Below, in pieces: positions 13,651 to 55,650 of a stretch of 64,000 nucleotides of DNA (position 1 is its first letter; the number at the start of each line of letters is the position of its first letter). Under the pieces are notes generated by a model that was given only the letters and a program-made list of their open reading frames with translations, ran no database searches and was not told the origin of the DNA. The stretch is from Mobula birostris (lineage: Eukaryota). The stretch is taken from positions 99,190,408 to 99,254,407 of the forward strand of contig NC_092379.1 in the NCBI RefSeq assembly GCF_030028105.1, read 5' to 3'. Both the position numbers and the translations under genes were made by a program.

Positions 13651-14132
13651 CAAGACAGATTAGGTCAAGTTTTTTTCTCTTGTAGGTCATGGAGAAACCA
13701 AGTGGATTTTTTTTTTTAAACAATTTTGTATTTTCTTAGTCGCTAAGACAAGTTGGTTCTCGTCTTCATCTAATGTACTAATCAGGTTCCTACTGTTCAG
13801 TACAGGCATCATAGAAAAGAGAAAAATAGAACACAGCGCCTCACTAACTGATACTAAACACACATACAATGGTAATTTTACACAACAGAACAATGGACAA
13901 GTACAGCTGGATAAAAACTAGACATGCAAAGTTATAAGTCACAGAAGAAATAGACTTCATAAAGGAGACAAAATTATAGCCTTTAAAACATATTTAGCCC
14001 AATAACAGCATATATATCTCTTTCTTTTTAAGTTTTGTAATTCAGACAAGTAGATTTCCACATTAATTTCATATTTCACATGTTCAGTCAAAACAAATAC
14101 CAGTTCCAGTTGAATGCAGGAGTAATTCCTAC

Positions 14133-14284
14133 CTTTTCACCACCATCTTCAGTGCCCTGAACGATCCTTTAATAAGGATGAGTGCCTCCTGTCTTGAGCC
14201 ATATAGTGGTGAGCCACTGATGTTTATAATTTCATCACCGACCTGTAGTTTCTTCGACAAAGCAGCCTTCCCTCCATCTTCAAT
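14133..14284 (-). CDS. SHROOM4: SHROOM4 coding exon 2 (rest of PDZ domain)
   Basis: Not in the ORF track; read manually. Acceptor TTTTAG|, then IEDGGKAALSKKLQVGDEIINISGSPLYGSRQEALILIKGSFRALKMVVK(R), then donor AG|GTAGG. 152 nt, phase 0 start compatible with exon 1. Closely matches human IEDGGKAALSQKMRTGDELVNINGTPLYGSRQEALILIKGSFRILKLIVRR. Confidence 0.95.
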
Positions 14285-14495
14285 CTAAAATTAGATAATA
14301 AAAATCCAATAAATGCAGCAAATAACAAAGATAAAAAAATGTACATAAGTGCAGTAGTTCTAAACAGAGCAAATAGTCTACAAAATACTTAACTGTTCAT
14401 CAACATGACAATAGTTGATAAAGTGAACAAAACAACTTCAGAGAGTTTAACTATGGTCCCACCCCATTTTATTATATAGAAATTAGATTTAATTA

Positions 14496-14507
14496 TTGAA
14501 TATATGC
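14496..14507 (+). repeat. Left target-site duplication TTGAATATATGC of the RTE-MCEE insertion
   Basis: Identical 12-mer at 14496-14507 (abutting the CAA tail) and 18896-18907 (abutting the MCEE fragment). Confidence 0.93.
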
Positions 14508-17500
14508 TGTTGTTGTTGTTCGTCCTTCATAGTCGAAGATGGCCATGGCTTCAAAGTCAAATGGGAGATTGGTGGCTGTGGGTCCGGAGGTGACTGATGG
14601 GGACAATCCGGGCCCTGAAGGCTCGCCCACATGTGGGACACAAGTGGGTGGGTGCTGTCGTGGCACTGGATGCTGCTCGGGACTTGCGCACAGCACGCTT
14701 TCGTTGCGCCTCGATGATGCGCCTGACTTCAGCTGCACGGGCTCCTGTGGTGATCTTGCTGCGCCAAGCTGGACGGTCAAGGGCAAGCGTCTCCCACGTG
14801 TCGACACCCAGGCCTTTGAGGGACGCTTTGAGGCAGTCTTTATAAACTTTCTTCTGCCCCCCGACTGAGCGCTTGCCCTGACACAGTTCTCCGTACAGCA
14901 GCTGCTTAGGCATTCGGCTGTCTGGCATTCTGACCACATGTCCAGCCCACCTGGCTTGGGCTTTCAGCAGGAGGGTGTAGACGCTGCAGAGCCCAGCTCG
15001 TTCCAGGATTTCCGTGTCGAGGACTTTGTCCTGCCACCTGATGTGGAGGAGTCTGCGGAGACAGCTCAGGTGAAAATGGTTCAGCTGTTTGGCGTGTCTG
15101 CTGTAGACAGTCCAGGTCTCGCTGGCGTAAAGGAGGGTGGTAAGGACCACTGCACAGTAGACCTTCAGCTTGGTGGTAAGGCTGACTCCTCTCCGCTCCC
15201 AGACGTTCTCACGGAGTCTCCCAAAGGCGGTGCTGGCTTTCGCAATCCTGTTGTTGACCTAGCGTCTATATTCACTGTGCGAGAGTGTATGCTGCCCAGG
15301 TAGGTGAAGTTGTCGACTGCCTGGAGGTTCTGGCCATTCACCGTGATGCGCGGCTCCTGGTATGGCTTTCCTGGGGCAGGCTGGTACATAGCTTCGGTCT
15401 TTTTGGTGCTGATAGTGAGACCGAAGTTGTCGCAGGCTTGTGAGAAGCAGTCCATTTCACGCTGCATCTCCTGCTCTGTGCTGGCATTGAGTGCGCAGTC
15501 ATCAGCAAACAACAAGTCTCTGATGACAGTCTCTTGCACCTTTGTAACTGCCTGCAGGCGCCTAAGGTTGAACAACCTGCCGTCAGTCCTGTACCTGACG
15601 TGGATTCCTTCTTCGTAGTTACGGAAGGCATCTGTCAGCATGGCAGAGAATACCATACTGAACAGAGTCGGGGCAAGAACGCAGCCTTGTTTGATGCCAT
15701 TTGTCCCTGGGAAGGCCTCCGACTCGTCGCCGTCATCCAGAACTTTCACCATCATAACGTCATGGAACTGCCGGACGATTGTGATGAACTTGCTGGGGCA
15801 GCCAAACTTCTCCATGATTTTCCACAAGCCTTCTCTGCTGACCGTATCGAAAGCCTAGGTTAGATCGACAAAGGTCACGAAGAGGTCGCTGTGTTGCTCC
15901 TGGCATTTTTCCTGGAGTTGGCGCGCAGCAAAAATCATGTCTGCAGTCCCACGTTCAGCACGGAAGCCGCACTTGCTTTCTGGGAGCAGACCTTGCTCAA
16001 GATGTTGGAGAAGGCGGTTGAGCAGGACGCGGGCCAGAATCTTTCCCGCAATGGACAAGAGGGAGATGCCGCGGTGGTTGTCGCAAGACTGGCGGTTGCC
16101 TTTCCTCTTGTAGATATCAACTACGCTGGCATCTTTCAGCTGTTGCGGGACCTGTCCCTTTTTCCACATGGACTGGAAGAGTACAGTCAGCTGTTGCATC
16201 ATGACAGGGCCTCCTGCTTTGTATACCTCAGCAGGGATTGCATCGGGTCCTGGCGCTTTGCCACAGGAGAGTTGCTTCACTGCCTTCCTGACGTCATCTA
16301 CTATGGGGAGGGTGTCGAGGTTCTTGTTGATCTCTACCTGGGGCAGGCGGGCAATGGCCTCGTCATTGATGTCGGCAGGGCGGTTAAGGACGTTGTTAAA
16401 GTGCTCAGCCCACCGATCCAGAATCTGCTTCTTCTCTGTCAGCAGCTGCGTCTCATCTGCGTTGAGGAGGGGTGAGGAGCCGGAGGACTGGGGTCCATAT
16501 ACAGCCTTAAGCGCATTGTAGAAGCACTTTATGTCGTGGCTGTCTGCATAGCCCTGGATTTCATCGGCCTTCTTGCTGAACCAGCTATCCTGCATTTCAC
16601 CAAGTTTTTTCTGCACCTTTCTTCTTGCGTTGGTAAAGGCATCTTTCTTGGCTAGCGACGTGGGTTCGTCCTGATGCGCTTTGTAATGTTGATGTTTCTC
16701 CGTTAGTAGTGCCTGTATTTCTTCATCATTCTCATCGAACCAGTCTTGGTTTCTTCGGGTTGCTGGTCTGAGATGTTTGAGGGCGGTAGTGTAGACAGCA
16801 TCTCCGAAGGCCGTCCACTGTTCCTCAACGCTGGTCCCGTCATCCTGTGGTGTATCTGGCAGTCTGCCTTTAAGGTCATCGACGAGTTCTTCTGCAACCC
16901 TGCTGCTTTTCAGCTTGGAGACATTCAGCCTCTTTGCAGTCTTCTGCCCTTGGGGTCTTCTCATGGGCAGAATGCGAAGCCTGAACTTGGACACAATGAG
17001 GCGGTGATCGGTCCAGCAGTCGGCACCACACATGGCTCTCGTCCATCCTGTCCCTCTTCCTGGTGATGATGTAGTCAATCAGATGCCAGTGCTTCGAGCG
17101 TGGGTGCATCCATGATGTCTTCTTACGGGTGGGTAAGCGGAACAGGGTGTTGGTGATGACAAGGTCGTGTGTGGCACATGTCTTGAGGAGCAGAAGGCCA
17201 TTGTTGTTACACTTGCCAGTGCCGTGTCTTCCAATGATCCCTTCCCAGGTTTGGTAGTCTGTCCCTACTCTGGCATTGAAGTCCCCGAGAACGATGAGCT
17301 TCTCTGACTGCAGGATTGCTGAGATGAGGGTGTCGAGTTCTTCATAGAACTTGTCCTTAATGTCATCTGGGTTGGTCATGGTGGGAGCGTAGGCACTAAT
17401 CAGCGTAGCACTCCTCTTGTTTGCAAGTGGGAGCTGAAGTGTCATCAGGCGGTCGTTGATGCTGTCTGGGTGCTTGGTGAGTTTACGGGCGAGGTTAGAA

Positions 17501-18510
17501 TTGATGACAAATCCCACGCCTGCTTCTCGTCGTTCAGCGCTGCTGTGACCGCTCCAGAAGAACGTGTATCCACCACTACGCTCTGTCAGCTGGCCCTTGT
17601 CTGCTAGGCGCGTTTCGCTGAGAGCTGCCATGTCCACGTTGTAGCGAGCTAGCTCTTTTGCAACCAGTGCAGTTCTTCTCTCTGGTCTGTCTGCCTTGAT
17701 GTTATCTCGCAGAGTTCTCACGTTCCATGTGCCAAGGTTGAGCACCATCACTTTCTTCTTCACTGTTGTAGGTCGACCGCTATGAGGGATCCCCACCAGC
17801 CGCGGTAAGCTGGTCAGGGTGAGGTGAAGCAGACGATGTTTGAGGCACCTTTTCCAGTCCCTTCCTCCATGGAGGTGAGCAGAGCGATCCTAAAGAGGGC
17901 TGCTCAGACACCCAGGGGGCTGCCGAACTCAACTGCTGCTTCGGTCCAGTAGAGAGCGACCCTATGCCCTGGGCCGCCTGTGTGCAGGTTTGTGACTGCA
18001 GCTTCCAGTGTATCCGTACCTGCTGCTTCGCCGCTCCCCCATCGCCCCAGGACTTCAGGTTGCGCGTTGGGTTTGAAGTCATGACTTGTGCTTGACTTGG
18101 ATTAAAGTGAGGGAGAGCTGCGCAGGTCGTCAGCCTCACTCTCTCGTCCCGGCCTATCTGGACCCAGTGGCAAGACATAGTCGAGACGGCTGGAGATAGG
18201 TCAGGATGCAGTGGATGGCCGGCAGTGTTCTGTGTGTCTCACTGTGCCCTCTTAGCGCTCCACGATGCATTGCTGAGAATCACCTTTCTGCCCATTGAAC
18301 CAGTGATGGTTTCTTCCGCATAGTCCGCTGAATCCAGGTTTCACACGCTAGGTAGACAAGCTCTGAGTGTTGTGGGTCTACGGCAGTTCTTGCGGCATGC
18401 TCGCAAGCCTCCCTACGCATTGTTGGGCATCCTCATCCGCCTTTGTAGCCATTGGGAGATGTCTCCTCTTCCGCCTGCTCCACCATTGGGATGATCACCT
18501 TGGTTACTGG
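14508..18510 (-). mobile_element. Full-length RTE-clade LINE (APE + RT + C-terminal C2H2), recently inactivated
   Basis: APE motifs GTWNVRTL, SETR, SAYAPT, LGDFNARVG, HLIDY. RT motifs GIKQGCVLAPTLF and LFADD. CPTC..HLRTH zinc finger. (CAA)n tail at 14508-14520. The single ORF is broken by about three lesions (frameshift ~17045, TAG at 15855-15857, frameshift ~15265). ~750-nt 5'UTR. Confidence 0.95.
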
Positions 18511-18691
18511 CCTATGGAAGTGGGCTCGCAGCAGGCGGCCGGGGTGGGCGGTGGCGGTCACGACAAGCGGCAGGCCAGCTCCAGGCCTCGGGCCTCGCCC
18601 CCTCCGCCGCCTCGCACTGGCTGCAGGCCGCCGACGGTGCGGTGGCGGCGGGCTGCCCGGGGCCGGGCCCGGCCTCACCAAGAGGCAGCAT

Positions 18692-18895
18692 CAGGGTACG
18701 CACCTGCTGGGCCCGCAGCTGCTGAAGGACGGTGGCCATGTGGTCCACCTCCAGGCAAATGTGGTGGATGCCGCCGCCAGGGCTCTTGCGGAGGAAGCCG
18801 AGGATCGGGCTGCGCTCACCCAGCGGCTCCAGCAGTTCCAACTTGGTGTTGCCCAGCTCCACGAAGGCCGCGCTGACGCCGTGCTCGGGCGTCAG
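18692..18895 (-). pseudogene. MCEE: Processed MCEE (methylmalonyl-CoA epimerase) fragment at the 5' end of the RTE insertion
   Basis: 68 open codons LTPEHGVSAAFVELGNTKLELLEPLGERSPILGFLRKSPGGGIHHICLEVDHMATVLQQLRAQQVRTL align to human MCEE ~P80-L145 (PEHGVSVVFVNLGNTKMELLHPLGRDSPIAGFLQKNKAGGMHHICIEVD). N- and C-termini are absent. Starts exactly at the TSD. Confidence 0.92.
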
Positions 18896-18907
18896 TTGAA
18901 TATATGC
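18896..18907 (+). repeat. Right target-site duplication TTGAATATATGC
   Basis: See the left copy; base composition drops abruptly from GC-rich to AT-rich at this point. Confidence 0.93.
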
Positions 18908-19804
18908 AACTTTCAGCTGACTACACCATCCACTAATAAAGTCCAACTGAGAATATACTGTCTGTTCCTCCTCTTCTCACATCAGCCAGCTTTATAACGT
19001 GAAAGATATTTCTTCTTTGAGATTCCTTTTTGTCTCTTTCTGATCGGGCAGTCTTCATTATTGCTGTTCTCTTCTAGGTGGTGACTGCACATCCACATCC
19101 ATTCTCAATAGTTTTCTTTCTATGAAATGACATTGCAATTGGCAATTACGTTAACTGCTGTGGACAGTAAACTTGCTTCTCCAACATTATAGATCAAAAG
19201 GGTCTTGGTATTTACATTAATAATCACATTCATTTCCAAATGTTAATGTACTGCACTTTCAGTCACTCCATCTGAATGTTTTCCTAAGCTCAAACGAGAT
19301 GTTTTCATACCTACCCCCATAGTTCAACAATCCAATTCATTCCCAAACTCAGCTGGGGTTTTAGCCCTTTATCTGCCATCCTTGCCTCTGTGATTTCGTG
19401 TTAGTTACGTAAATCACTGCATATTTTTCCCCAGTCCTCCAGGATTCCTTCCATTGGCCTATTTCTCAAAACAGTTCATCTAAGTTACTTCAAATAGCTT
19501 TCTTTTACTGATGTAGTGCAATCTGAATCTGATAATTTCTATTTTTAATTCCAACCCTGATATTGTCATCAATTCCTGTTGATAATAGTGGGTCTATTAT
19601 TTACCTGAACAACTCAGCTGACTGGAAATCACCTTTCCTCTTTCTCCGGACTGTGACCCTGCAACTAAACATCCTTTCACAGATCATCACCCACCAGAAA
19701 CCTCTGCTCCCTCACCTTCTCTTGACATAGAATTATATGTTTTTATACATTATGTGACAGAATTTTATTAGAAACTCAATCATAGTGTCTAGATGCAAAG
19801 AAAT

Positions 19805-35344: not shown

Positions 35345-36405
35345 TTTAGAAACAGAAATCTACAGCACATTACAGGCCCTTTGGCCCACAATGTTGTGCC
35401 GACCATGTGACCTACTGAAGAAACTGCCTAGAATTTCCCTATCGCATAGCCCTCTATTTTTCTAAGCTCCACGTACCTATCTAAGAGTCTCTTAAAAGAC
35501 CCTGTTGTATCTGCCTCTACCACCTTCACTGGCAGTGCATTCCACACACCCACCACTCTCTGGGATGAAAAACTTACCTCTGACATTCCCCTTGTACCTA
35601 CTTCCAAGCACCCTAAAACTGTGCCCCCTCGTGTTAGCCATGTCATCCCCGGGAAAAAGCCTCTGGCTATCCACACAATCATTGCCTCTCATCATTTTGT
35701 ACACCTCTGTCAGGTCACCTTTCAACCTCCGTCACTCCAAGGAGAAAAGGCAATGTTCACTCAACCTATTCTCATAAGACATGCTCTCCAATCCAGGCAA
35801 CATCCTTGTAAATCTCCTCTGCACTCTCTTTATAGTATCCACATACTTCCCGTAATGAGGTGACCAGAACTGAACACAGTGCTCTAGTACAATCTAACTA
35901 AGGTCTTATATAGCTGTAACATTACCTCACAGCTCTTGAAAATCCCACAGTTGGTGAACACACCATACACCTTCTTAACAACACCCCAAGATCTCGCTGA
36001 TCCTCCACACTGCCAAGTCTTACCATTAATATTATATTCTGTCTTCAAATTTGACCTTCCGAAATGAACCACTTCACACTTAACTGGGTTGAACTCCATC
36101 TGCCACTTCTCAGCCCAGTTCTGCATCCTATTGAAGTCTTGCTGTAACCCCTGACAACCTTCCAGACTATCCACAGCACCCCCAACTTTTGTGTCATCAG
36201 CAAACTTACTAAGCCACCCTTCTACTTCCTCATCCAGGTCTTTTATAATAATCACAAAGAGGTTGTGTACCAGTGCAGGTCCCTGCAGAACACCACTGTT
36301 CACTGTCTTCCATGCAAAATACAAACCATCTACAACCATCCTTTGCCTTCTGTGGGCAAGCCAATTCTGGATCCACAAAGCAAGGTCTCCTTGGATCCCA
36401 TGCCT
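35345..36405 (-). mobile_element. CR1 LINE 3' part
   Basis: WIQNWLAHRRQR...SKFADDTK...WQMEFN and SQRVVGVWNALP; tail at ~35350. Confidence 0.92.
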
Positions 36406-43274: not shown

Positions 43275-44425
43275 ACCATATAACAATTACAGCATGGAAA
43301 CAGGCCATGTCGGCCCTTCTAGTCCATGCCGAACTCTTACTCTCGCCTAGTCCCACTGACCTGCACTCAGCCCATAACCCTCCATTCCTTTCCTGTCCAT
43401 ATATCTATCCAATTTAACTTTAAATGACAACATCGAACCGACCTGAACCACTTCTGCTGGAAGCTCGTTCCACACAGCTACCACTCTCTGAGTAAAGAAG
43501 TCCCTCATGTTACCCCTAAACTTTCGCCCTTTAACTCTCAACTCATGTCCTCTTGTTTGAACCTCCCCCACTCTCAATGGAAAAAGCCTATCCACGTCAA
43601 CTCTATCTATCCCCCTCATAATTTTAAATACCTCTATCAAGTCCCTCCTCAACCTTCTAGGCTCCAAAGAATAAAGACCTAATTTGTTCAACCTTTCTCT
43701 GTAACTTAGGAGATGAAACCCAGGCAACATTTTAGTAAATCTCCTCTGTACTCTCTCAATTTTATTGACATCTTTCCTATAATTTGGTAACCAGAACTGT
43801 ACACAATACTTCAGATTTGGCCTCACCAGTGCCTTATATAATTTCAACATTACATCCCAACTCCTATACTCAATGCTCTGATTTATAAAGGCCAGCATAC
43901 CAAAAGCTTTCTTCACCACCCTATCCACATGAGATTCCACCTTCAAGGAACTATGCACCATTATTCCTAGATCCCTCTGTTCTTCAATGCCCTACCATTT
44001 ACCATGTATGTCCTATTTTCATTAGTCCTACCAAAATGTAGCACCTCACATTTATCAGCATTAAACTCCATCTGCCATCTTTCAGCCCACTCTTCTAAGT
44101 GGTCTAAATCTCTCTGCAAGCTTTGAAAACCTACTTTGTTATCCACAACTCCACCTATCTTAGTATCATCTGCATACTTACTCATCCAATTTACCACTCC
44201 ATCATCCAGACCATGAATATATATTACAAACAACATTGGACCCAGTACAGATCCCTGAGGCACACCACTAGACACCATCCTCCAATCTGACACACAGTTA
44301 TCCATCACTACTCTCCAGCGTCTCCCATCCAGCCACTGCTGAATCCATTTTACTACTTCGATATTAATACCTAACAATTGAACCTTCCTAACTAACCTTC
44401 CATGTGGAACCTTGTCACAGGCCTT
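43275..44425 (-). mobile_element. CR1 LINE 3' 1.1 kb
   Basis: DKVPH...GVPQGSVLGP...YADDTK and YCVQFW...QRVVAVWNELP. Confidence 0.95.
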
Positions 44426-45863
44426 ATTGGTTGCTTTGTACTTTCCAAGCATAAAATTCTTACTATCTAGGCGCTGGAGAATGGCATCTGTCTGCATTCA
44501 CCACCATGTGCAGGTTCTTTTACAATTCATAGACAAGCTTGATTTGGGAACATAATTACCATTCTCTCACCATCACTGGACCAAAATCTTGGAACTCCCT
44601 GCGCCACGGGGATCCATTCACCACATGGTCTTCAGCCCATCCAGACCTGGCTTTCCATCAACTAACTTTTCAAGAGCTTCTAGGGATGACCATTAAATGC
44701 AGGTGTGACTAGGAACACCCATATCCCATGAACAAACTTTAAAGAAAAGCTCTTGGCGAGCAGGAACGTCCGGCAAAAGCTTAAGAAATTTGGCAGGGGA
44801 AGTAGCAGAAAGAGAGAGAAAATTTCAAGTTTCAATGAAATCCTCTTTGACTCATCCTGATAACTAGCGGTTGTGAAGTGTTCTTTCTCTCCCAAGTAGA
44901 CTTTATTTAATTAAAGACTTAACGATGGAGTACCGCTACCCCCCACTTTACAAAACACTTGCGTTTGTCTTTTGGGGATATTAACTCAAACAGCTGTAAA
45001 GGGCTGTCCAGGCGAAATCGCCGCACAGGGACTGAACTTCAGCTCTAACTGCTTGGCGGTCGGTGGGTGGGGGGGGGGGGGAGAGGGGCGGGGGGCGTTA
45101 ATCAGTAACAATACGGTATAATATGTAACTAAAGAAGGGAATTAACATATCCCCTATGAGTTAAGTTAAATGCTGTTCTGTGAACCGGTCGGTTACTTAC
45201 TGCCCGTTTTACTTGTGAAGGAGTTGCGAAGGTGCTTCAGCAGTGAAAGATCGTTAATCATTTACACAAATAAAACATTAGCTGCTCCCCCCCCCAACCA
45301 CACACATACACCTCCTGCCCATGCCCCTCTGCCACCGGGTTCAGAAATAAACCTTTCCCTCGCCTACAGAGGGGAAGTAACAACCCAATATACTAAACAG
45401 CCCTACTGCAATACCACTGCAAAATGTGCACACATTTAGAATGCAGAAAACCTGCAATTTTTAAATTGGAACCATGTCCTTCAGCACCTCCCGAAATACA
45501 TCTCAATGAAGGCAGTTATGCAGCCTGTCGGTATTTTTAAACATATATTTTCCTGCCTCTCCTTTCAAACAGACTTTCTACTTTTTTCCCCCCAATGCAA
45601 TTTAAAGTGCATTCTCCAAATTCCCTTCCAGCAGCAGGCTGTTGCAGATTGCCATGCACGCCGATCACTTGAGACCCCTTTTATGCAGAGTTTGCGCTTC
45701 GTTGTGAACTATTTCTCCACACCACCCCCCATCCAGAACTTCGTTTTTCCTTCTCTGCGTTCCAAGACGGATTACTGTTACGCGAAAGTCCTTCCATACT
45801 TTTTGCACGAGCTATATCATGGACACTTTCTAGCGGGAGAGCAAAGTCTCGATTTTTTTTTAC

Positions 45864-48614: not shown

Positions 48615-49699
48615 AACATAGAAACATAGAAAATAGGTGCAGGAGTAGGCCATTTGGCCCTTCGAGCCTGCACCACCATTCAGTATGATCATGGCTGATC
48701 ATCCAACTCAGAACCCTGTACCTGCCTTCTCTCCATACCCGCTTTAGCCACAAGGGCCATATCTAACTCCCTCTTAAATATAGCCAATGAACTGGCCTCA
48801 ACTGTTTCCTGTGGCAGAGAATTCCACAGATTCACCACTCTCTGTGTGAAGAAGTTTTTCCTCATCTCGGTCCTAAAAGGCTTCCCCTTTATCCTTAAAC
48901 TGTGACCCCTTGTTCTGGACTTCCCCAACATCGGGAACAATCTTCCTGCATCTAGCCTGTCCAATCCCTTTAGAATTTTATACGTTTCAATAAGATACCC
49001 CCTCAATCTTCTAAATTCCAGCGAGTATAAGCCTAGTTGATCTTGTCTTTCATCATATGAAAGTCCTGCCATCCCAGGAATCAATCTGGTGAACCTTCTT
49101 TGTATTCCCTCTATGGCAAGAATGTCTTTCCTCAGATTAGGGGACCAAAACTGCACACGATACTCCAGGTGTGGTCTCACCACGGCCTTGTACAACTGCA
49201 GTAGAACCTCCCTGCTCCTGTACTCGAATCCTCTTGCTATGAATGCCAGCATACCATTCATCTTTTTCATCGCCTGCTGTACCTGTATGCCCACTTTCAA
49301 TGACTGGTGTACAATGACACCCAGGTCTCGTTGCACCTCCCCTTTTCCTAATCGGCCACCATTCAGATAATAATCTATTTTCCTGTTTTTGCCACCAAAG
49401 TGGGTAACCTCACATTTATCCACATTAAATTGTATCTGCCATGAATTTGCCCACTCACCTAATCTATCCAAGTCACACGGCATCCTCTTAGCATCCTCCT
49501 CACAGCTAACACTGCCGCCCAGCTTCGTGTCATCCGCAAACTTGGAGATGCTGCATTTAATTCCCTCGTCTAAGTCATTAATATATATTGTAAACAACTG
49601 GGGTCCCAGCACTGAGCCTTGAGGTACCCCACTGGTCACTGCCTGCCATTCTGAAAAGGTCCCGTTTATTCCCACTCTTTGCTTCCTGTCTGCAAACAA
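48615..49699 (-). mobile_element. Young CR1 LINE 3' part (336-codon open frame)
   Basis: GVPQGSVLGP, KFADDTK, RPHLEY.VQFWSP, QRVVNLWNSLP; (TTTCTATG)n tail. Confidence 0.96.
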
Positions 49700-52197: not shown

Positions 52198-55100
52198 ACC
52201 TACCTGTGACGCCACTTTTAGGGAATTTTGTATCTGTATTCCCAGATCCCTCTATTCTACTGCACTCCTCAGTGCCTTACCATTAACCCTGTATGTTCTA
52301 CCTTGGTTTGTCTTTCCAACGTGCAATACCTCACACTTGTCTGTATTAAACTCCATCTGCCATTTTTCAGCCCATTTTTCCAGCTGGTCCAAGTCCCTCT
52401 GCAGGCTTTGAAAACCTTCCTCACTGTCTACTACACCTCCAATCTTTGTATCACCAGCAAATTTGCTGATCCAATTTACCACATTATCATCCAGATCATT
52501 GATATAGATGACAAATAACAATGGACCCAGCACTGATCCCTGTGGCACACCACTAGTCACAGGCCTCCACTCGGAGAAGCAATTCTCTACTACCACTCTT
52601 TGGCTTCTTCCATTGAGCCAATGTCTAATCCAATTTACCACCTCTCCATGTATACCTAGCGACTGAATTTTCCTAACTAACCTCCCATGTGGGACCTTGT
52701 CAAAGGCCTTACTGAAGTCCATGTAGACAATATCCACTGCCTTCCCTTCATCCACTTTCCTGGTAACCTCCTCAAAAAATTCCAACAGATTGGTCAAACA
52801 TGACCTACCATGCACAAAGCCATGTTGACTCTCCCTAAGAAGGTCCCTGTCTATTCAAATGCTTGTAGATTCTGTCTCTTAGTACTCCCTCTAATAACTT
52901 GCCTACTACCGACGTTAAACTTACTGGCCTATAATTTCCCGGATTGCTTTTCGATCCTTTTTTAAACAACGGAACAACATGAGCCACTCTTCAATCCTCC
53001 GGCACCTCACCTGTCGACAGCGATATTTTAAATATTTCTGCCAGGGCCCCTGCAATTTCAACACTAGTCTCCTTCAAGGTCCGAGGGAACACCCTGTCAG
53101 GTCCCAAGGATTTATCCACTTTAATTTTCCTCAAGACAGCAAGGACCTCTTCCTTTTCGATCTGTACAGTTTCCATGATCTCACTACTTGTTTCCCTTAA
53201 TTCCATAGACTTCATGCCAGTTTCCTTAGTAAATACAGACGCAAAAAAACTATTTAAGATCTCCCCCATTTCCTTCGGTTCCGCACATAGCTGACCACTC
53301 TGATCTTCAAGAGGGCCAATTTTATCCCTTACAATCCTTTTGCTCTTAATATACCTGTAAAAGCTCTTTGGATTATCCTTCACTTTGACTGCCAAGGCAA
53401 CCTCATGTCCTTTTTTAGCCCTCCTGATTTCTTTCTTAAGTATTTTCTTGCACTTCTTATACTCCTCAAGCACCTTATTTACTCCCTGCTTCCTATACAT
53501 GTCATACAACCTCCTCTTCTTCTTTATCAGAGTTGCAATATCCCTTGAGAACCAAGGTTCCTTATTTCTATTCACTTTGCCTTTAATCCTGACAGGAACA
53601 TACAAATTCTGCACTCTCAAAATTTCTCCTTTGAAGGCTTGCCACCTACTGATCACGTCCTTGCCAGAGAACAACCTGTCCCAATCCACTGTTTTTAGAT
53701 CCTTTCTCATTTCTTCAAATTTGGCCTTCTTCCAGTTCAGAACCTCAACCCTAGGACCAGATCTATTCTTGTCCATGATCAAGTTGAAACTAATGGTGTT
53801 ATGATCACTGGAACCAAAGTGCTCCCCTACACAGACTTCCGTCACTTGTCCTAACTCGTTTCCTAACGGGAGATCCAATATTGCATCCCCTCTAGTTGGT
53901 CCCTCTATATATTGATTTAGAAGACATTCCTGAACACATTTTACAAACTCTAAACCATCTAGACCCCTAACAGTATGGGAGTCCCAATCAATATATGGAA
54001 AATTAGAATCCCCTACCACCACAACTTCCAATTCTTGTTGGCTATTGGGTGGTCTGTAATACAATCCCACTAATGTGGCCATACCTTTCCTGTTTCTCAG
54101 CTCCACCCATAAGGACTCAGTAGACAAGCCCTCTAATCTGTCCTGCCTGAGCACTGCTGTAATATTTTCCCTAACAAGCACTGCTGCTCCCCCACCTTTC
54201 ATTCCTCTGCCTCGATCACATCTGAAACATCGGAACCCTGGAATATTAAGCTGCCAGTCCTGCCCCTCCTGTAGCCAAGTTTCACTAGTTGCTATAATAT
54301 CCTAATTCCACGTGTCAATCCACGCCCTCAACTCATCCGCCTTCCCTGCAATACTCCTAGCATTGAAATATATACACCTCAGAAGATTTTTACCACCACT
54401 CACAACCTTTCTATTAGCGGATTTGCTTGAACTTTTAACATCATTTATTTTCACCCCAGCCACACTGTCAGCTCTGGCACTCTGGTTCCCATCCCCCTGC
54501 AAATCTAGTTTAAAGCCTCCCCAATAGCACTAACAAACCTCCCTGAAAGAATATTGGTCCCCTTGTAGTTCAAGTGTGACCTGTCTCTCTTGTACAGGTC
54601 CCACCTGCCCCAGAAGAGGTCCCAATTATCCTGAAATCTGAAACCCTGCCCCCTACGCCAGTACCTCAGCCACTTGTTCATCCTCCAGAGCATCCTATTC
54701 TTACCCTCATTGGCACGTAGCACAGGTAGCAATCCTGAGATTACCACCCTCGAGGTCCTGCTTTTCAACTTCCTACCAAGCTCTCTATACTCACTGTCCA
54801 GGACCTCCTCACTCTTTCTTGCTATGTCATTGGTACCGATGTGCACCACGACATCTGGCTGATCACCCTCCCACTTCAGAATGTCATGCAATCGATCAGA
54901 GACATCCTTGACCCTGGCACCCGGGAGGCAACAAACCATCCTGTATTCTCTGTCACGACCACAGAACCTCCTATCTGTACCTCTAACTATCGAGTCCCCT
55001 ATCACTACCGCTCTCCTCTTTTTCCACCCTCCCTTCTGCACTGCAGAGCCAGACTCAGTGCCAGAGATCCGGCTACTGCAGCTTGTCCCAGGTAAGTCAT

Positions 55101-55650
55101 TCCCCCCAACAGTATCCAATGCGGTATACTTGTTGTTGAGGGGAATAGCCACAGGGGAACCCTGCTCTGCCTGCCCTTTCCTCTTCCCTCGCCTGACAGT
55201 GACCCAATTTCCTGTCCTCTGCTCCTTTGGCGTAACTACCTCCCTGTAGCTACTATCTATAATCTCCTCATTCTCCCGAATGATCCCAAGGTCATCCAGC
55301 TCCTGCTCCAGTTCCCTAACGCGGTTTTTTAGGAGCTGCAGCTGGATGCACTTCTTGCAGGTGTCGTTGTCAGGGACACCGGAGGGCTCCCTAACTTCCC
55401 ACATCCTGCAAGAGGAGCATTCCAACATCCTGCCTGGCATTCTCTCTACGCTAGACAATCTGAACAAAAAACTTACCAGAACCTACCCTGGCCTCTGCCT
55501 GTTCTCGCCGAAGCCTGTTTAGCCAAAGCCGTCCCACTCTGACTCAGTCCACTCCGATGATGGCCGCTGTATATGATGGTCTGTTTTTAAACCTTGGTGC
55601 GCTACGTTACGCGCCTGCGCAGTGCAGACCCTTCTCCCCGAGCAGTGTTT
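52198..55650 (-). mobile_element. CR1 LINE: 5'UTR + ORF1 + ORF2 (APE, RT), lacking its 3' end in this orientation
   Basis: ORF1 54505-55467, APE (YFNARSI, YYRPP, GD.N, SDH), RT (DFSKAFDKVPH, GVPQGSVLGP, KFAGDTK). Confidence 0.96.
54505..55467 (-). CDS. CR1 ORF1 protein (zinc finger, coiled coil, SGNH esterase)
   Basis: CSSC...CKKC, LKNRVRELEQELDDL, VIGDSIVR, VHIGTND, D..HLN..G; open 320 codons. Confidence 0.88.
   Translation of the reverse strand: MFRLSSVERMPGRMLECSSCRMWEVREPSGVPDNDTCKKCIQLQLLKNRVRELEQELDDLGIIRENEEIIDSSYREVVTPKEQRTGNWVTVRRGKRKGQAEQGSPVAIPLNNKYTALDTVGGNDLPGTSCSSRISGTESGSAVQKGGWKKRRAVVIGDSIVRGTDRRFCGRDREYRMVCCLPGARVKDVSDRLHDILKWEGDQPDVVVHIGTNDIARKSEEVLDSEYRELGRKLKSRTSRVVISGLLPVLRANEGKNRMLWRMNKWLRYWRRGQGFRFQDNWDLFWGRWDLYKRDRSHLNYKGTNILSGRFVSAIGEALN

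What the first reader, a model, noticed from the sequence alone, without database searches (positions are those of the whole stretch)
14496..18907. Single retro-insertion fusing an intron-less MCEE fragment to a full-length RTE LINE
Seen: one perfect 12-bp TSD (TTGAATATATGC) encloses, 5' to 3' on the minus strand, 204 nt of MCEE coding sequence, ~180 nt of unrelated GC-rich DNA, the RTE 5'UTR, the APE-RT ORF and a (CAA)n tail. Established: human MCEE has an intron between ICIE and VDN (c.378/379, from memory). The fragment reads ICLE-VDH without a break, so if that intron is conserved in the source gene the fragment came from spliced mRNA. Inference: either RTE reverse transcriptase jumped templates from its own RNA onto cellular RNAs during this insertion, or an RTE subfamily has captured gene sequence as a GC-rich 5' head and spreads it. 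mRNA-LINE chimeras are documented mainly for mammalian L1, and I know of no MCEE-carrying RTE.
Basis: partly seen in the sequence, partly recalled or inferred. Interest (0 to 1): 0.88.

Follow-up and report, generated by a model that had tools for sequence, protein, structure and literature searches.

The report
Host MCEE mRNA piece heading a LINE
A dead jumping gene (an RTE-type LINE) in a manta ray genome landed in one event carrying 200 bases of the host's MCEE messenger RNA on its front end, and that front piece was already made before this landing, which shows how such elements can pick up new front ends from host genes.

Summary
A perfect 12-bp target-site duplication occurs only at 14496-14507 and 18896-18907. 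On the minus strand it encloses 5 filler bases, 200 nt of MCEE coding sequence, a GC-rich piece, an RTE-type APE-RT LINE (now broken in three or more places) and an (AAC)n tail.

Public contigs show both outer junctions in two species. A third species has a precise empty site with one copy of the 12-mer, so all parts arrived together.

The MCEE piece differs at 5 of 200 bases from a 1385-nt, high-depth RNA-type contig of the same animal. That contig continues as MCEE on both sides and is unbroken at the position of human intron 2.

The MCEE|GC-rich junction was not made here. A Mobula hypostoma protein model (XP_062915877.1) carries the same junction and the same derived Ala-to-Thr, but more MCEE upstream. 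Contig depth suggests several head copies in two species.

I favour a pre-formed head carried by a small RTE lineage (0.5). The main rival is a one-off join to a transcript of an MCEE-like pseudogene (0.3).

An HDV-like ribozyme reading of the GC-rich piece is weak.

This scan earlier noted a similar host-exon/RTE fusion (FAM102A) elsewhere in this genome.

The parts
18896..18907 (.). Target-site duplication, 5' side of the minus-strand element
   Evidence: Exact 12-mer, one of only 2 in the window. It is the single copy kept in the empty-site contig of organism D (record 9).
18891..18895 (-). 5 filler bases between the TSD and the MCEE piece
   Evidence: The RNA-type MCEE contig stops matching at 18890 and runs on unlike the window (tables 7 and 8). 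These bases are not part of the 12-mer.
18691..18890 (-). Fragment of spliced MCEE mRNA (ray codons 59-124 plus 2 bases), in sense with the LINE
   Evidence: Pfam Glyoxalase_4, 1e-9. 64 of 66 residues identical to both Mobula MCEE proteins. 5 other letters in 200 against a 1385-nt contig of depth 400 in run X14.
18512..18690 (-). GC-rich piece of unknown origin (78% GC). Its upstream ~115-150 nt are low-copy and travel with the MCEE piece. Its downstream end merges into the abundant LINE 5' region.
   Evidence: GC content. The same MCEE|GC-rich junction and 78 nt of this piece are readable in P0002. Depth at 18667: 200 in X2, 200 in X5, 0 in X15 (table 4). No Rfam match.
18072..18511 (-). LINE 5' region (5' UTR and probable start of coding). 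It contains a 42-nt core, 18156-18197, shared with a far more abundant repeat.
   Evidence: Depth bins and loose ends at 18156 and 18197 (tables 2 and 7). Relatives' proteins align from 18071 down.
14560..18071 (-). APE-RT coding region of an RTE-type LINE, broken. There is a gap versus other copies near 17041, a TAG at 15857-15855 and a 1-base gap near 15260. There is at least one further break upstream of 17796.
   Evidence: ORF pieces. Pfam Exo_endo_phos and RVT_1. Other copies differ at those places: tables 3-4. Of the 120 listed homologues, 10 are named craniofacial development protein 2(-like).
14508..14520 (-). (AAC)4A tail
   Evidence: Read directly. Contigs of organism B diverge into unlike flanks at 14508 (table 7).
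14496..14507 (.). Target-site duplication, 3' side
   Evidence: This copy is absent from the empty-site contig, which joins 14495 to 18896 (record 9).

Best explanation
One target-primed reverse transcription event inserted a single RNA. That RNA already consisted of a head (spliced MCEE mRNA up to coding base 373, joined to a GC-rich piece) followed by a complete RTE-type LINE.

Reverse transcription started at the (AAC)n tail, ran through the LINE and the GC-rich piece, and stopped inside the MCEE part. That gives the 200-nt stump, 5 filler bases and a 12-bp duplication.

The head was made earlier, once. A host mRNA piece was joined to other RNA or DNA in front of an RTE by a template jump, RNA ligation or a rearranged retrocopy; which of these is not resolved. 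A small RTE lineage then carried the head through further rounds.

This is plausible because RTEs lack a promoter of their own and are copied from long co-transcripts that include whatever lies upstream.

Shown: single insertion, host origin of the piece, and a junction older than this insertion. Inferred: that the other head copies are also attached to RTEs, and how the head was first made.
For: - TSD only at the two ends.
- Empty site in organism D: record 9 joins 14495|18896 with no extra letters. Filled junctions in organisms A (record 23) and B (records 24 and 31).
- The MCEE piece differs at 5 of 200 bases from a depth-400 contig in X14. That contig's loose ends read on as MCEE on both sides (tables 7-8).
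- X14 is not proportional to genomic DNA. The ratio of MCEE depth to RTE 3'-end depth is 400:100 there, against 630:122,881 in the DNA run X2 of the same sample (table 2). I therefore take X14 as RNA.
- P0002 (XP_062915877.1, M. hypostoma) aligns to 18889-18644 (67 of 82) and, in another frame, to 18665-18615 (16 of 17).
- P0002 starts 22 residues further upstream in MCEE than the window's piece, so it is a different, longer copy.
- P0002 and the window piece share Thr where both native Mobula proteins have Ala (HMATV against HMAAV).
- Depth of the MCEE bin 18706-18886 against the flanks is 630 vs 44 (A), 74 vs 9 (B) and 7.3 vs 6.9 (D). At 18667 it is 200, 200 and 0.
- RTEs are described as promoter-less and co-transcribed (PMC6765202, passages).
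- A host-exon/RTE fusion was noted elsewhere in this genome (s1-145256, unchecked note).
Against: - I never saw a second copy in which head and RTE are contiguous.
- Contig depths are sums of per-contig means, which the tool itself says are not copy numbers. They are also inconsistent between the two parts: MCEE 14x against GC-rich 4.5x in A, and 8x against 22x in B.
- Only one head-like protein model turned up among the 120 best of 1213 hits. A search with the antisense ORF across the junctions found nothing (766 candidates, none scored).
- The shared Ala-to-Thr is a single residue.
- No chimeric RNA contig was seen in X14. The GC-rich piece has depth 0 there.
Confidence: 0.5

Rival explanations
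1. One-off join at this insertion. An MCEE-like pseudogene locus (the XP_062915877.1 type, i.e. MCEE retro-fragment plus adjacent GC-rich DNA) is transcribed. During this one insertion the RTE reverse transcriptase, on reaching the 5' end of its own RNA, jumped onto that transcript, or the two RNAs were ligated beforehand. The head copies elsewhere are then pseudogene duplicates, not RTE heads.
For: The MCEE|GC-rich junction exists independently of this locus. The abundant RTE-family homology appears to end around 18540-18575, so an RTE 5' end there is possible (my arithmetic, tables 2 and 4). Organism D has RTE copies but depth 0 at 18667. Template jumps and RNA ligation are documented for L1 chimeras (PMC6789731 and bioRxiv 10.1101/2025.02.02.635956, passages).
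Against: Depth of both head parts is well above the 2-3 copies this model needs, with the caveats given for the best explanation. No RNA contig of X14 covers the GC-rich piece, so an expressed donor transcript was not seen.
Confidence: 0.3
2. All junctions were made in this one event. The RT jumped twice, from RTE RNA to a GC-rich cellular RNA and then to MCEE mRNA. This is the reader's first option, a tripartite chimera as described in Magnaporthe.
For: The architecture fits tripartite chimeras (PMC2104539; I saw only the search listing and the start of the abstract). One TSD and an empty site.
Against: The same MCEE|GC-rich junction, to the base (codons ..VRTL-M-L-P..), and the same derived Thr occur in a second copy. 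That copy has more MCEE upstream and more changes. Two independent jumps at the same base are very unlikely.
Confidence: 0.05
3. Independent nested insertions or an assembly artefact. The MCEE piece and the RTE arrived separately, or were joined by mis-assembly.
For: No single listed contig or long read spans the whole element. All four runs laid were short contigs.
Against: The empty site in D lacks everything between the two 12-mers, and no intermediate state was seen. Both outer junctions are reproduced in contigs of two species. The inner MCEE|GC-rich junction is reproduced in another species' assembly. No internal TSDs were noticed when reading the junctions.
Confidence: 0.03

Closest known systems
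L1 5' chimeras with mRNAs and small RNAs in mammals (U6/L1; 17 mRNA/L1 chimeras in hg38; bioRxiv 10.1101/2025.02.02.635956 and PMC6789731, passages read)
   Same: One TSD around a composite. The host RNA part lies 5' of the LINE and in the same sense, and is spliced. Candidate mechanisms are a template jump, RNA ligation, or splicing into the LINE.
   Different: The LINE here is RTE-type (single APE-RT ORF, (AAC)n tail), not L1. The host part is an internal stretch ending inside the last coding exon, not first exons ending at a splice donor. A further GC-rich piece lies between the host part and the LINE. The head seems to recur in more than one copy.
Tripartite chimeric pseudogenes of Magnaporthe grisea (MGL LINE, double template jumps; PMC2104539, listing and start of abstract only)
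   Same: Three parts fused head to tail within one insertion, ending in a LINE.
   Different: Here one of the two junctions demonstrably predates the insertion, so a double jump at this site is not needed.
5' UTR switching of RTE LINEs in Nicotiana (bioRxiv 10.1101/2022.11.04.512097; abstract and section 12 read)
   Same: RTE lineages that exchange non-homologous 5' ends. The authors name fusion of a host mRNA to the LINE body as one possible source.
   Different: In tobacco the donors are unknown. Here the donor of one part is identified (MCEE mRNA), and an insertion with TSD and empty site is documented.
FAM102A/EEIG1 exons 1-2 fused to an RTE-like LINE in the same genome (scan note s1-145256, unchecked)
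   Same: Same genome and same LINE type. Spliced host exons lie on the 5' side, within a single insertion.
   Different: That join is reported at a splice donor. The MCEE join (after coding base 373, native ..CTGA|GC..) is not at a GT donor, nor at the conserved exon boundary.
HDV-like ribozyme heads of RTE and R2 elements (PMC6765202, passages; scan notes s1-145255 and s1-145293)
   Same: A strict descriptor of the HDV-like core fits with its first base at 18689, 2 bases from the MCEE junction.
   Different: No Rfam HDV family matches at E<=10. Folding energy is no better than shuffles (z 1.18 and -0.21). The piece is far rarer than full-length RTE copies.

Membership tests
LINE-mediated 5' chimeric retro-insertion (host RNA + LINE in one TPRT event) | One target-site duplication flanks the whole composite | tested here: met
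   The 12-mer occurs only at 14496 and 18896.
LINE-mediated 5' chimeric retro-insertion (host RNA + LINE in one TPRT event) | An empty site lacking all parts exists in a relative | tested here: met
   X15 record 9 joins 14495|18896 with one 12-mer.
LINE-mediated 5' chimeric retro-insertion (host RNA + LINE in one TPRT event) | The host part is colinear with processed mRNA and in sense with the LINE | tested here: met
   Colinear over 200 nt with the X14 contig, record 8. Gapless ray-human alignment and human intron 2 at c.378/379 (PMC5037260, passages). The intron of the ray gene itself was not seen.
RTE clade of non-LTR retrotransposons | Single ORF with N-terminal APE endonuclease and RT | tested here: met
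   Pfam Exo_endo_phos 8e-14 and RVT_1 2.3e-15, in order on one strand. No separate ORF1 with a Pfam match was found (protein 6).
RTE clade of non-LTR retrotransposons | Short 3' UTR ending in a short tandem repeat rather than poly(A) | tested here: met
   36-nt UTR and an (AAC)4A tail.
RTE clade of non-LTR retrotransposons | Phylogenetic placement of the RT/APE within the RTE clade | tested here: inconclusive
   No tree was built. Ten of the 120 listed APE homologues are named craniofacial development protein 2(-like). That this name marks RTE/BovB-derived endonucleases is recalled, not tested.
HDV-like self-cleaving ribozyme | Nested double pseudoknot P1/P1.1/P2/P3/P4 with a C in J4/2 | tested here: inconclusive
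   The strict descriptor hits once in 18900-17700, at 18689. 123 of 3000 shuffles give any hit, and 7 of 3000 give one in the first 4 bases. P4 and J4/2 are not canonical, and the relaxed descriptor gives 20 unspecific hits.
HDV-like self-cleaving ribozyme | Match to a curated covariance model | tested here: not met
   0 matches at E<=1 on 17700-19000. There is no HDV-type match at E<=10 on 18480-18700.
HDV-like self-cleaving ribozyme | Self-cleavage | not testable with these tools
   Needs in vitro transcription.
Ordinary processed pseudogene of MCEE | mRNA 3' end with poly(A) directly followed by the TSD | tested here: not met
   The piece stops at coding base 373 and is followed by non-MCEE sequence. 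The native contig runs on as ..SPEPRLGAHG.. (table 7).

The most novel reading that the evidence does not exclude
The GC-rich piece is a subfamily-specific HDV-like ribozyme head. Its predicted first base (18689) lies one base from the end of the MCEE sequence. If so, the host mRNA fragment was joined to the 5'-hydroxyl end left by self-cleavage. The join could be an RtcB-type ligation to a cleaved mRNA, or an end-to-end template jump. That would link ribozyme processing directly to how promoter-less LINEs acquire new 5' heads. The head would persist because the upstream MCEE sequence lets some transcripts escape cleavage.
Probability: 0.1. Interest if true: 0.8.

Novelty: new variant of a known kind. 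Interest (0 to 1): 0.5.

Why it matters
How LINE lineages replace their 5' ends is an old open question. It has been inferred for L1 and for plant RTEs from non-homologous 5' UTRs whose donors are unknown.

Here one donor is identified (MCEE mRNA). One insertion is dated between two species splits, with a preserved empty site. At least one older, longer copy shares the junction. A simple genome-wide search in two available Mobula assemblies could therefore reconstruct a full series from capture to spread.

Together with the FAM102A-RTE note in the same genome, it suggests that promoter-less, co-transcribed RTEs carry host transcript pieces more often than L1 does.

It also flags an annotated 'MCEE-like' gene model as a probable repeat-derived pseudogene fragment.

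Tried and rejected
Foreign or bacterial origin of the GC-rich MCEE piece (raised by the scan note s1-894998 on this window): rejected. The best matches are ray MCEE proteins, 64 of 66 identical to both Mobula proteins. A contig from the same animal differs at 5 of 200 bases.

Retained intron or use of a splice site at the MCEE|GC-rich junction: rejected. The native sequence reads ..CTGA|GC.. at the break, with no GT. The strong donor-like CAG|GTGCGT lies 13 bases upstream and is retained in the chimera (table 7).

rRNA, snRNA or another known structured RNA as source of the GC-rich piece: no Rfam match. Depth 0 at 18667 in organism D and in the RNA run argues against rDNA.

GC-rich piece as the canonical RTE 5' head: I first inferred this from similar bin depths (2284 against 2463 in X2). 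I withdrew it when table 4 showed a depth of only 200 at 18667, which means the bin mean is mostly spill-over from the abundant 5' region.

HDV-like ribozyme: pursued, and left as a weak hypothesis. A second candidate helix pair at 18200-18194/18159-18153 did not fit the descriptor.

Finding more head copies:
- The antisense ORF search found nothing.
- The scan's notes by sequence gave nothing.
- Searching the notes for MCEE gave nothing relevant.

A quick survey of the rest of the window found only other LINE RT/APE fragments and no host exon.

Literature: I found no report of an RTE-mRNA chimera. In one search I saw 12 of 73 listed papers, 12 of 86, and all 4.
Full report
WHAT IS THERE

The 12-mer TTGAATATATGC occurs at 14496 and 18896 and nowhere else in the window on either strand. 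The 4.4-kb element between the two copies has no other copy in the window.

Read on the minus strand, the order is:
- TSD
- 5 bases that belong to nothing recognisable (18895-18891)
- 200 nt of MCEE coding sequence (18890-18691)
- a GC-rich stretch (18690 to about 18512; 78% GC against 43% for the window)
- the LINE 5' region
- endonuclease and reverse-transcriptase pieces (Pfam Exo_endo_phos 8e-14; RVT_1 1e-6 and 2.3e-15)
- a 36-nt 3' UTR
- an (AAC)4A tail
- TSD

The ORF is in four pieces. The breaks coincide with places where contigs of other copies differ:
- extra letters in other copies near 17041
- another letter at 15857 in every contig that covers it, where this copy has TAG
- one extra letter in other copies near 15260 (tables 3-4)

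Proteins of related elements also align in the APE frame up to 18071, upstream of the first start codon. This holds for P0142 and P0162, which are among the 16 of 120 proteins flagged. The copy is therefore full-length in extent, but dead.

ONE INSERTION

I laid four public runs on 14000-19400 (runs chosen; all are kept as contigs).
- Organism A (X2) matches the flanks without a difference and crosses the 5' junction (record 23, 18857-19400). It is probably the source species.
- Organism B (X5) crosses both outer junctions (record 24, 14000-14537; record 31, 18850-19400), with 10 and 9 differences.
- Organism D (X15) has one contig, record 9, whose letters 791-1292 lie on 19397-18896 and whose letters 1293-1789 lie on 14495-14003. 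This is a precise empty site with a single 12-mer.

Flank differences are about 1.7% for B and 5.3% for D. The insertion therefore falls between those two splits. Nothing suggests an intermediate state (MCEE piece without RTE, or the reverse).

THE MCEE PIECE IS HOST mRNA

The best protein matches are ray MCEE proteins (1213 hits among 1432 candidates, 120 listed).
- Both Mobula proteins (P0122, P0123) match 64 of 66 residues.
- Hemitrygon matches 62 of 66.

Earlier notes of this scan call the genome manta ray.

In run X14, from the same sample as X2, a 1385-nt contig of depth 400 matches exactly 18691-18890 with 5 other letters. It runs on unlike the window on both sides (records and loose ends). 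Translated, its loose ends continue as MCEE..VGEPVAL before, and SPEPRLGAHG.. after, as.

The tool guesses that X14 may be DNA, but its depths are not genomic. MCEE is four times deeper than the RTE 3' end there, whereas in X2 it is about 200 times shallower. I therefore read this contig as the MCEE mRNA.

The contig and the window piece are both unbroken at ICLE|VDH (18749|18748). Human MCEE has three coding exons, with intron 2 at c.378/c.379 (PMC5037260, passages). Ray and human MCEE align without a gap over the last 132 residues. That places the boundary after the E of ICLE if the human protein has 176 residues, a length I recall rather than checked. The ray gene's own intron was not seen.

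THE HEAD IS OLDER THAN THIS INSERTION

P0002 (XP_062915877.1, 'MCEE-like', Mobula hypostoma, 111 aa) aligns to 18889-18644. It runs straight through the MCEE|GC-rich junction (..QQVRTLMLP..; 67 of 82 identical, with a 5-residue gap). After a frame shift it aligns to 18665-18615 (16 of 17).

It begins 22 residues further upstream in MCEE than the window's piece. The window's own flank does not encode those residues, and organism B's orthologous junction has the window's flank (record 31). P0002 therefore comes from another, longer copy.

P0002 carries several private changes. It also shares with the window's piece a Thr where both native Mobula proteins have Ala. The junction, and at least one substitution, therefore arose before both copies.

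HOW MANY COPIES

Only contig depths are available, and the tool warns that they are not copy numbers.

The bin 18706-18886 lies wholly inside the MCEE piece. Its depth against the flanks is:
- A: 630 against 44
- B: 74 against 9
- D: 7.3 against 6.9

At 18667, in the GC-rich piece, depth is 200 (A), 200 (B), 0 (D) and 0 (X14). One variant contig in A carries an extra letter there (table 4).

The two head parts are thus more than single-copy in A and B, and not detectably extra in D. The figures do not agree well with each other.

The LINE 5' region at 18344-18524 is far deeper (10,446 in A). Simple arithmetic on the bin means puts the end of that abundant homology near 18540-18575. The low-copy GC-rich piece is then about 115-150 nt long and is present in far fewer copies than the RTE ORF 5' region (2463 in A).

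MECHANISM

Two steps are shown:
- The composite moved as one RNA.
- The MCEE|GC-rich junction pre-existed.

My preferred reading (0.5) is a small RTE lineage whose long transcripts include the head, with this copy truncated inside it. RTEs are described as lacking promoters and being co-transcribed with upstream sequence (PMC6765202, passages), which makes carry-over of upstream sequence natural.

The main rival (0.3) is that the head belongs to a transcribed MCEE-like pseudogene and was joined to RTE RNA only in this event.

How MCEE base 373 was first joined to the GC-rich piece is open.
- The junction is not a splice site.
- One base (18690) matches neither the native MCEE continuation nor the start of the ribozyme P1 that I tried (18689).
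- A template jump with one added base, ligation (PMC6789731, passages) or a DNA rearrangement all fit.

RIBOZYME IDEA

Earlier notes report HDV-like ribozyme heads on RTEs in this genome.

In favour:
- A strict descriptor finds one core in 18900-17700, starting at 18689.
- All proposed helices pair.
- Only 7 of 3000 shuffles place a hit in the first four bases, and 123 of 3000 give any hit.

Against:
- The same descriptor hits 29 starts in the whole window.
- A relaxed version is unspecific, with 20 hits.
- P4 and J4/2 are not canonical.
- Rfam finds no HDV family.
- Folding energies equal those of shuffles.
- The piece is much rarer than full-length copies.

I keep this idea only as the boldest reading not excluded.

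KNOWN OR NEW

mRNA-LINE chimeras are documented for L1 and a fungal LINE. Plant RTEs switch 5' ends from unknown donors. I found no RTE-mRNA chimera in print, though supplements were closed. The scan itself has a similar unchecked case, s1-145256.

I rate this a new variant of a known kind, of moderate interest.

Noticed in passing
window 18156-18197 (minus strand; overlaps the ATG at 18178): This 42-nt core has contig depth far above the rest of the element in all three species. The bin holding it reads 102,845 in X2 and 22,672 in X15, against about 2,500 and 100 for the next ORF bin. Many contigs stop matching at 18197 and run on with a related but diverged sequence. It is probably shared with a very abundant non-autonomous relative.
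   Followed up: partly
window 16879-17796 (APE piece): The endonuclease is 79% identical to a shrimp protein (Penaeus chinensis 'craniofacial development protein 2-like') and 81% identical to a stingray one. It is 68-75% identical to coral, starfish and lancelet proteins. This is unusually high identity across phyla, as expected if this LINE type moves horizontally.
   Followed up: no
window 17797-18071: Proteins of related elements (coral P0142, Logan P0162) align in the APE frame upstream of the first start codon. The family's ORF therefore starts further 5' than the ORF list suggests, and this copy has at least one more break there.
   Followed up: partly
P0002 = XP_062915877.1 (Mobula hypostoma): The annotated 'methylmalonyl-CoA epimerase, mitochondrial-like' model reads from MCEE straight into the non-coding GC-rich piece. 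It ends where the window has CGA. It is probably a repeat-derived pseudogene fragment, not a paralogue.
   Followed up: partly
window 14739-18384: Run X14, which I take for RNA of the source animal, has contigs over much of the RTE body (depth 4-71). None lies over 18385-18690. The family appears to be transcribed, and the expressed copies lack this head or differ from it.
   Followed up: no
window 35884-36378, 43347-44497, 48689-49699, 52252-55467: These are other LINE reverse-transcriptase or endonuclease fragments (Pfam RVT_1 and Exo_endo_phos_2). No host exon turned up among the 10 longest ORFs tested outside the element, so the window is repeat-rich intronic or intergenic DNA.
   Followed up: no
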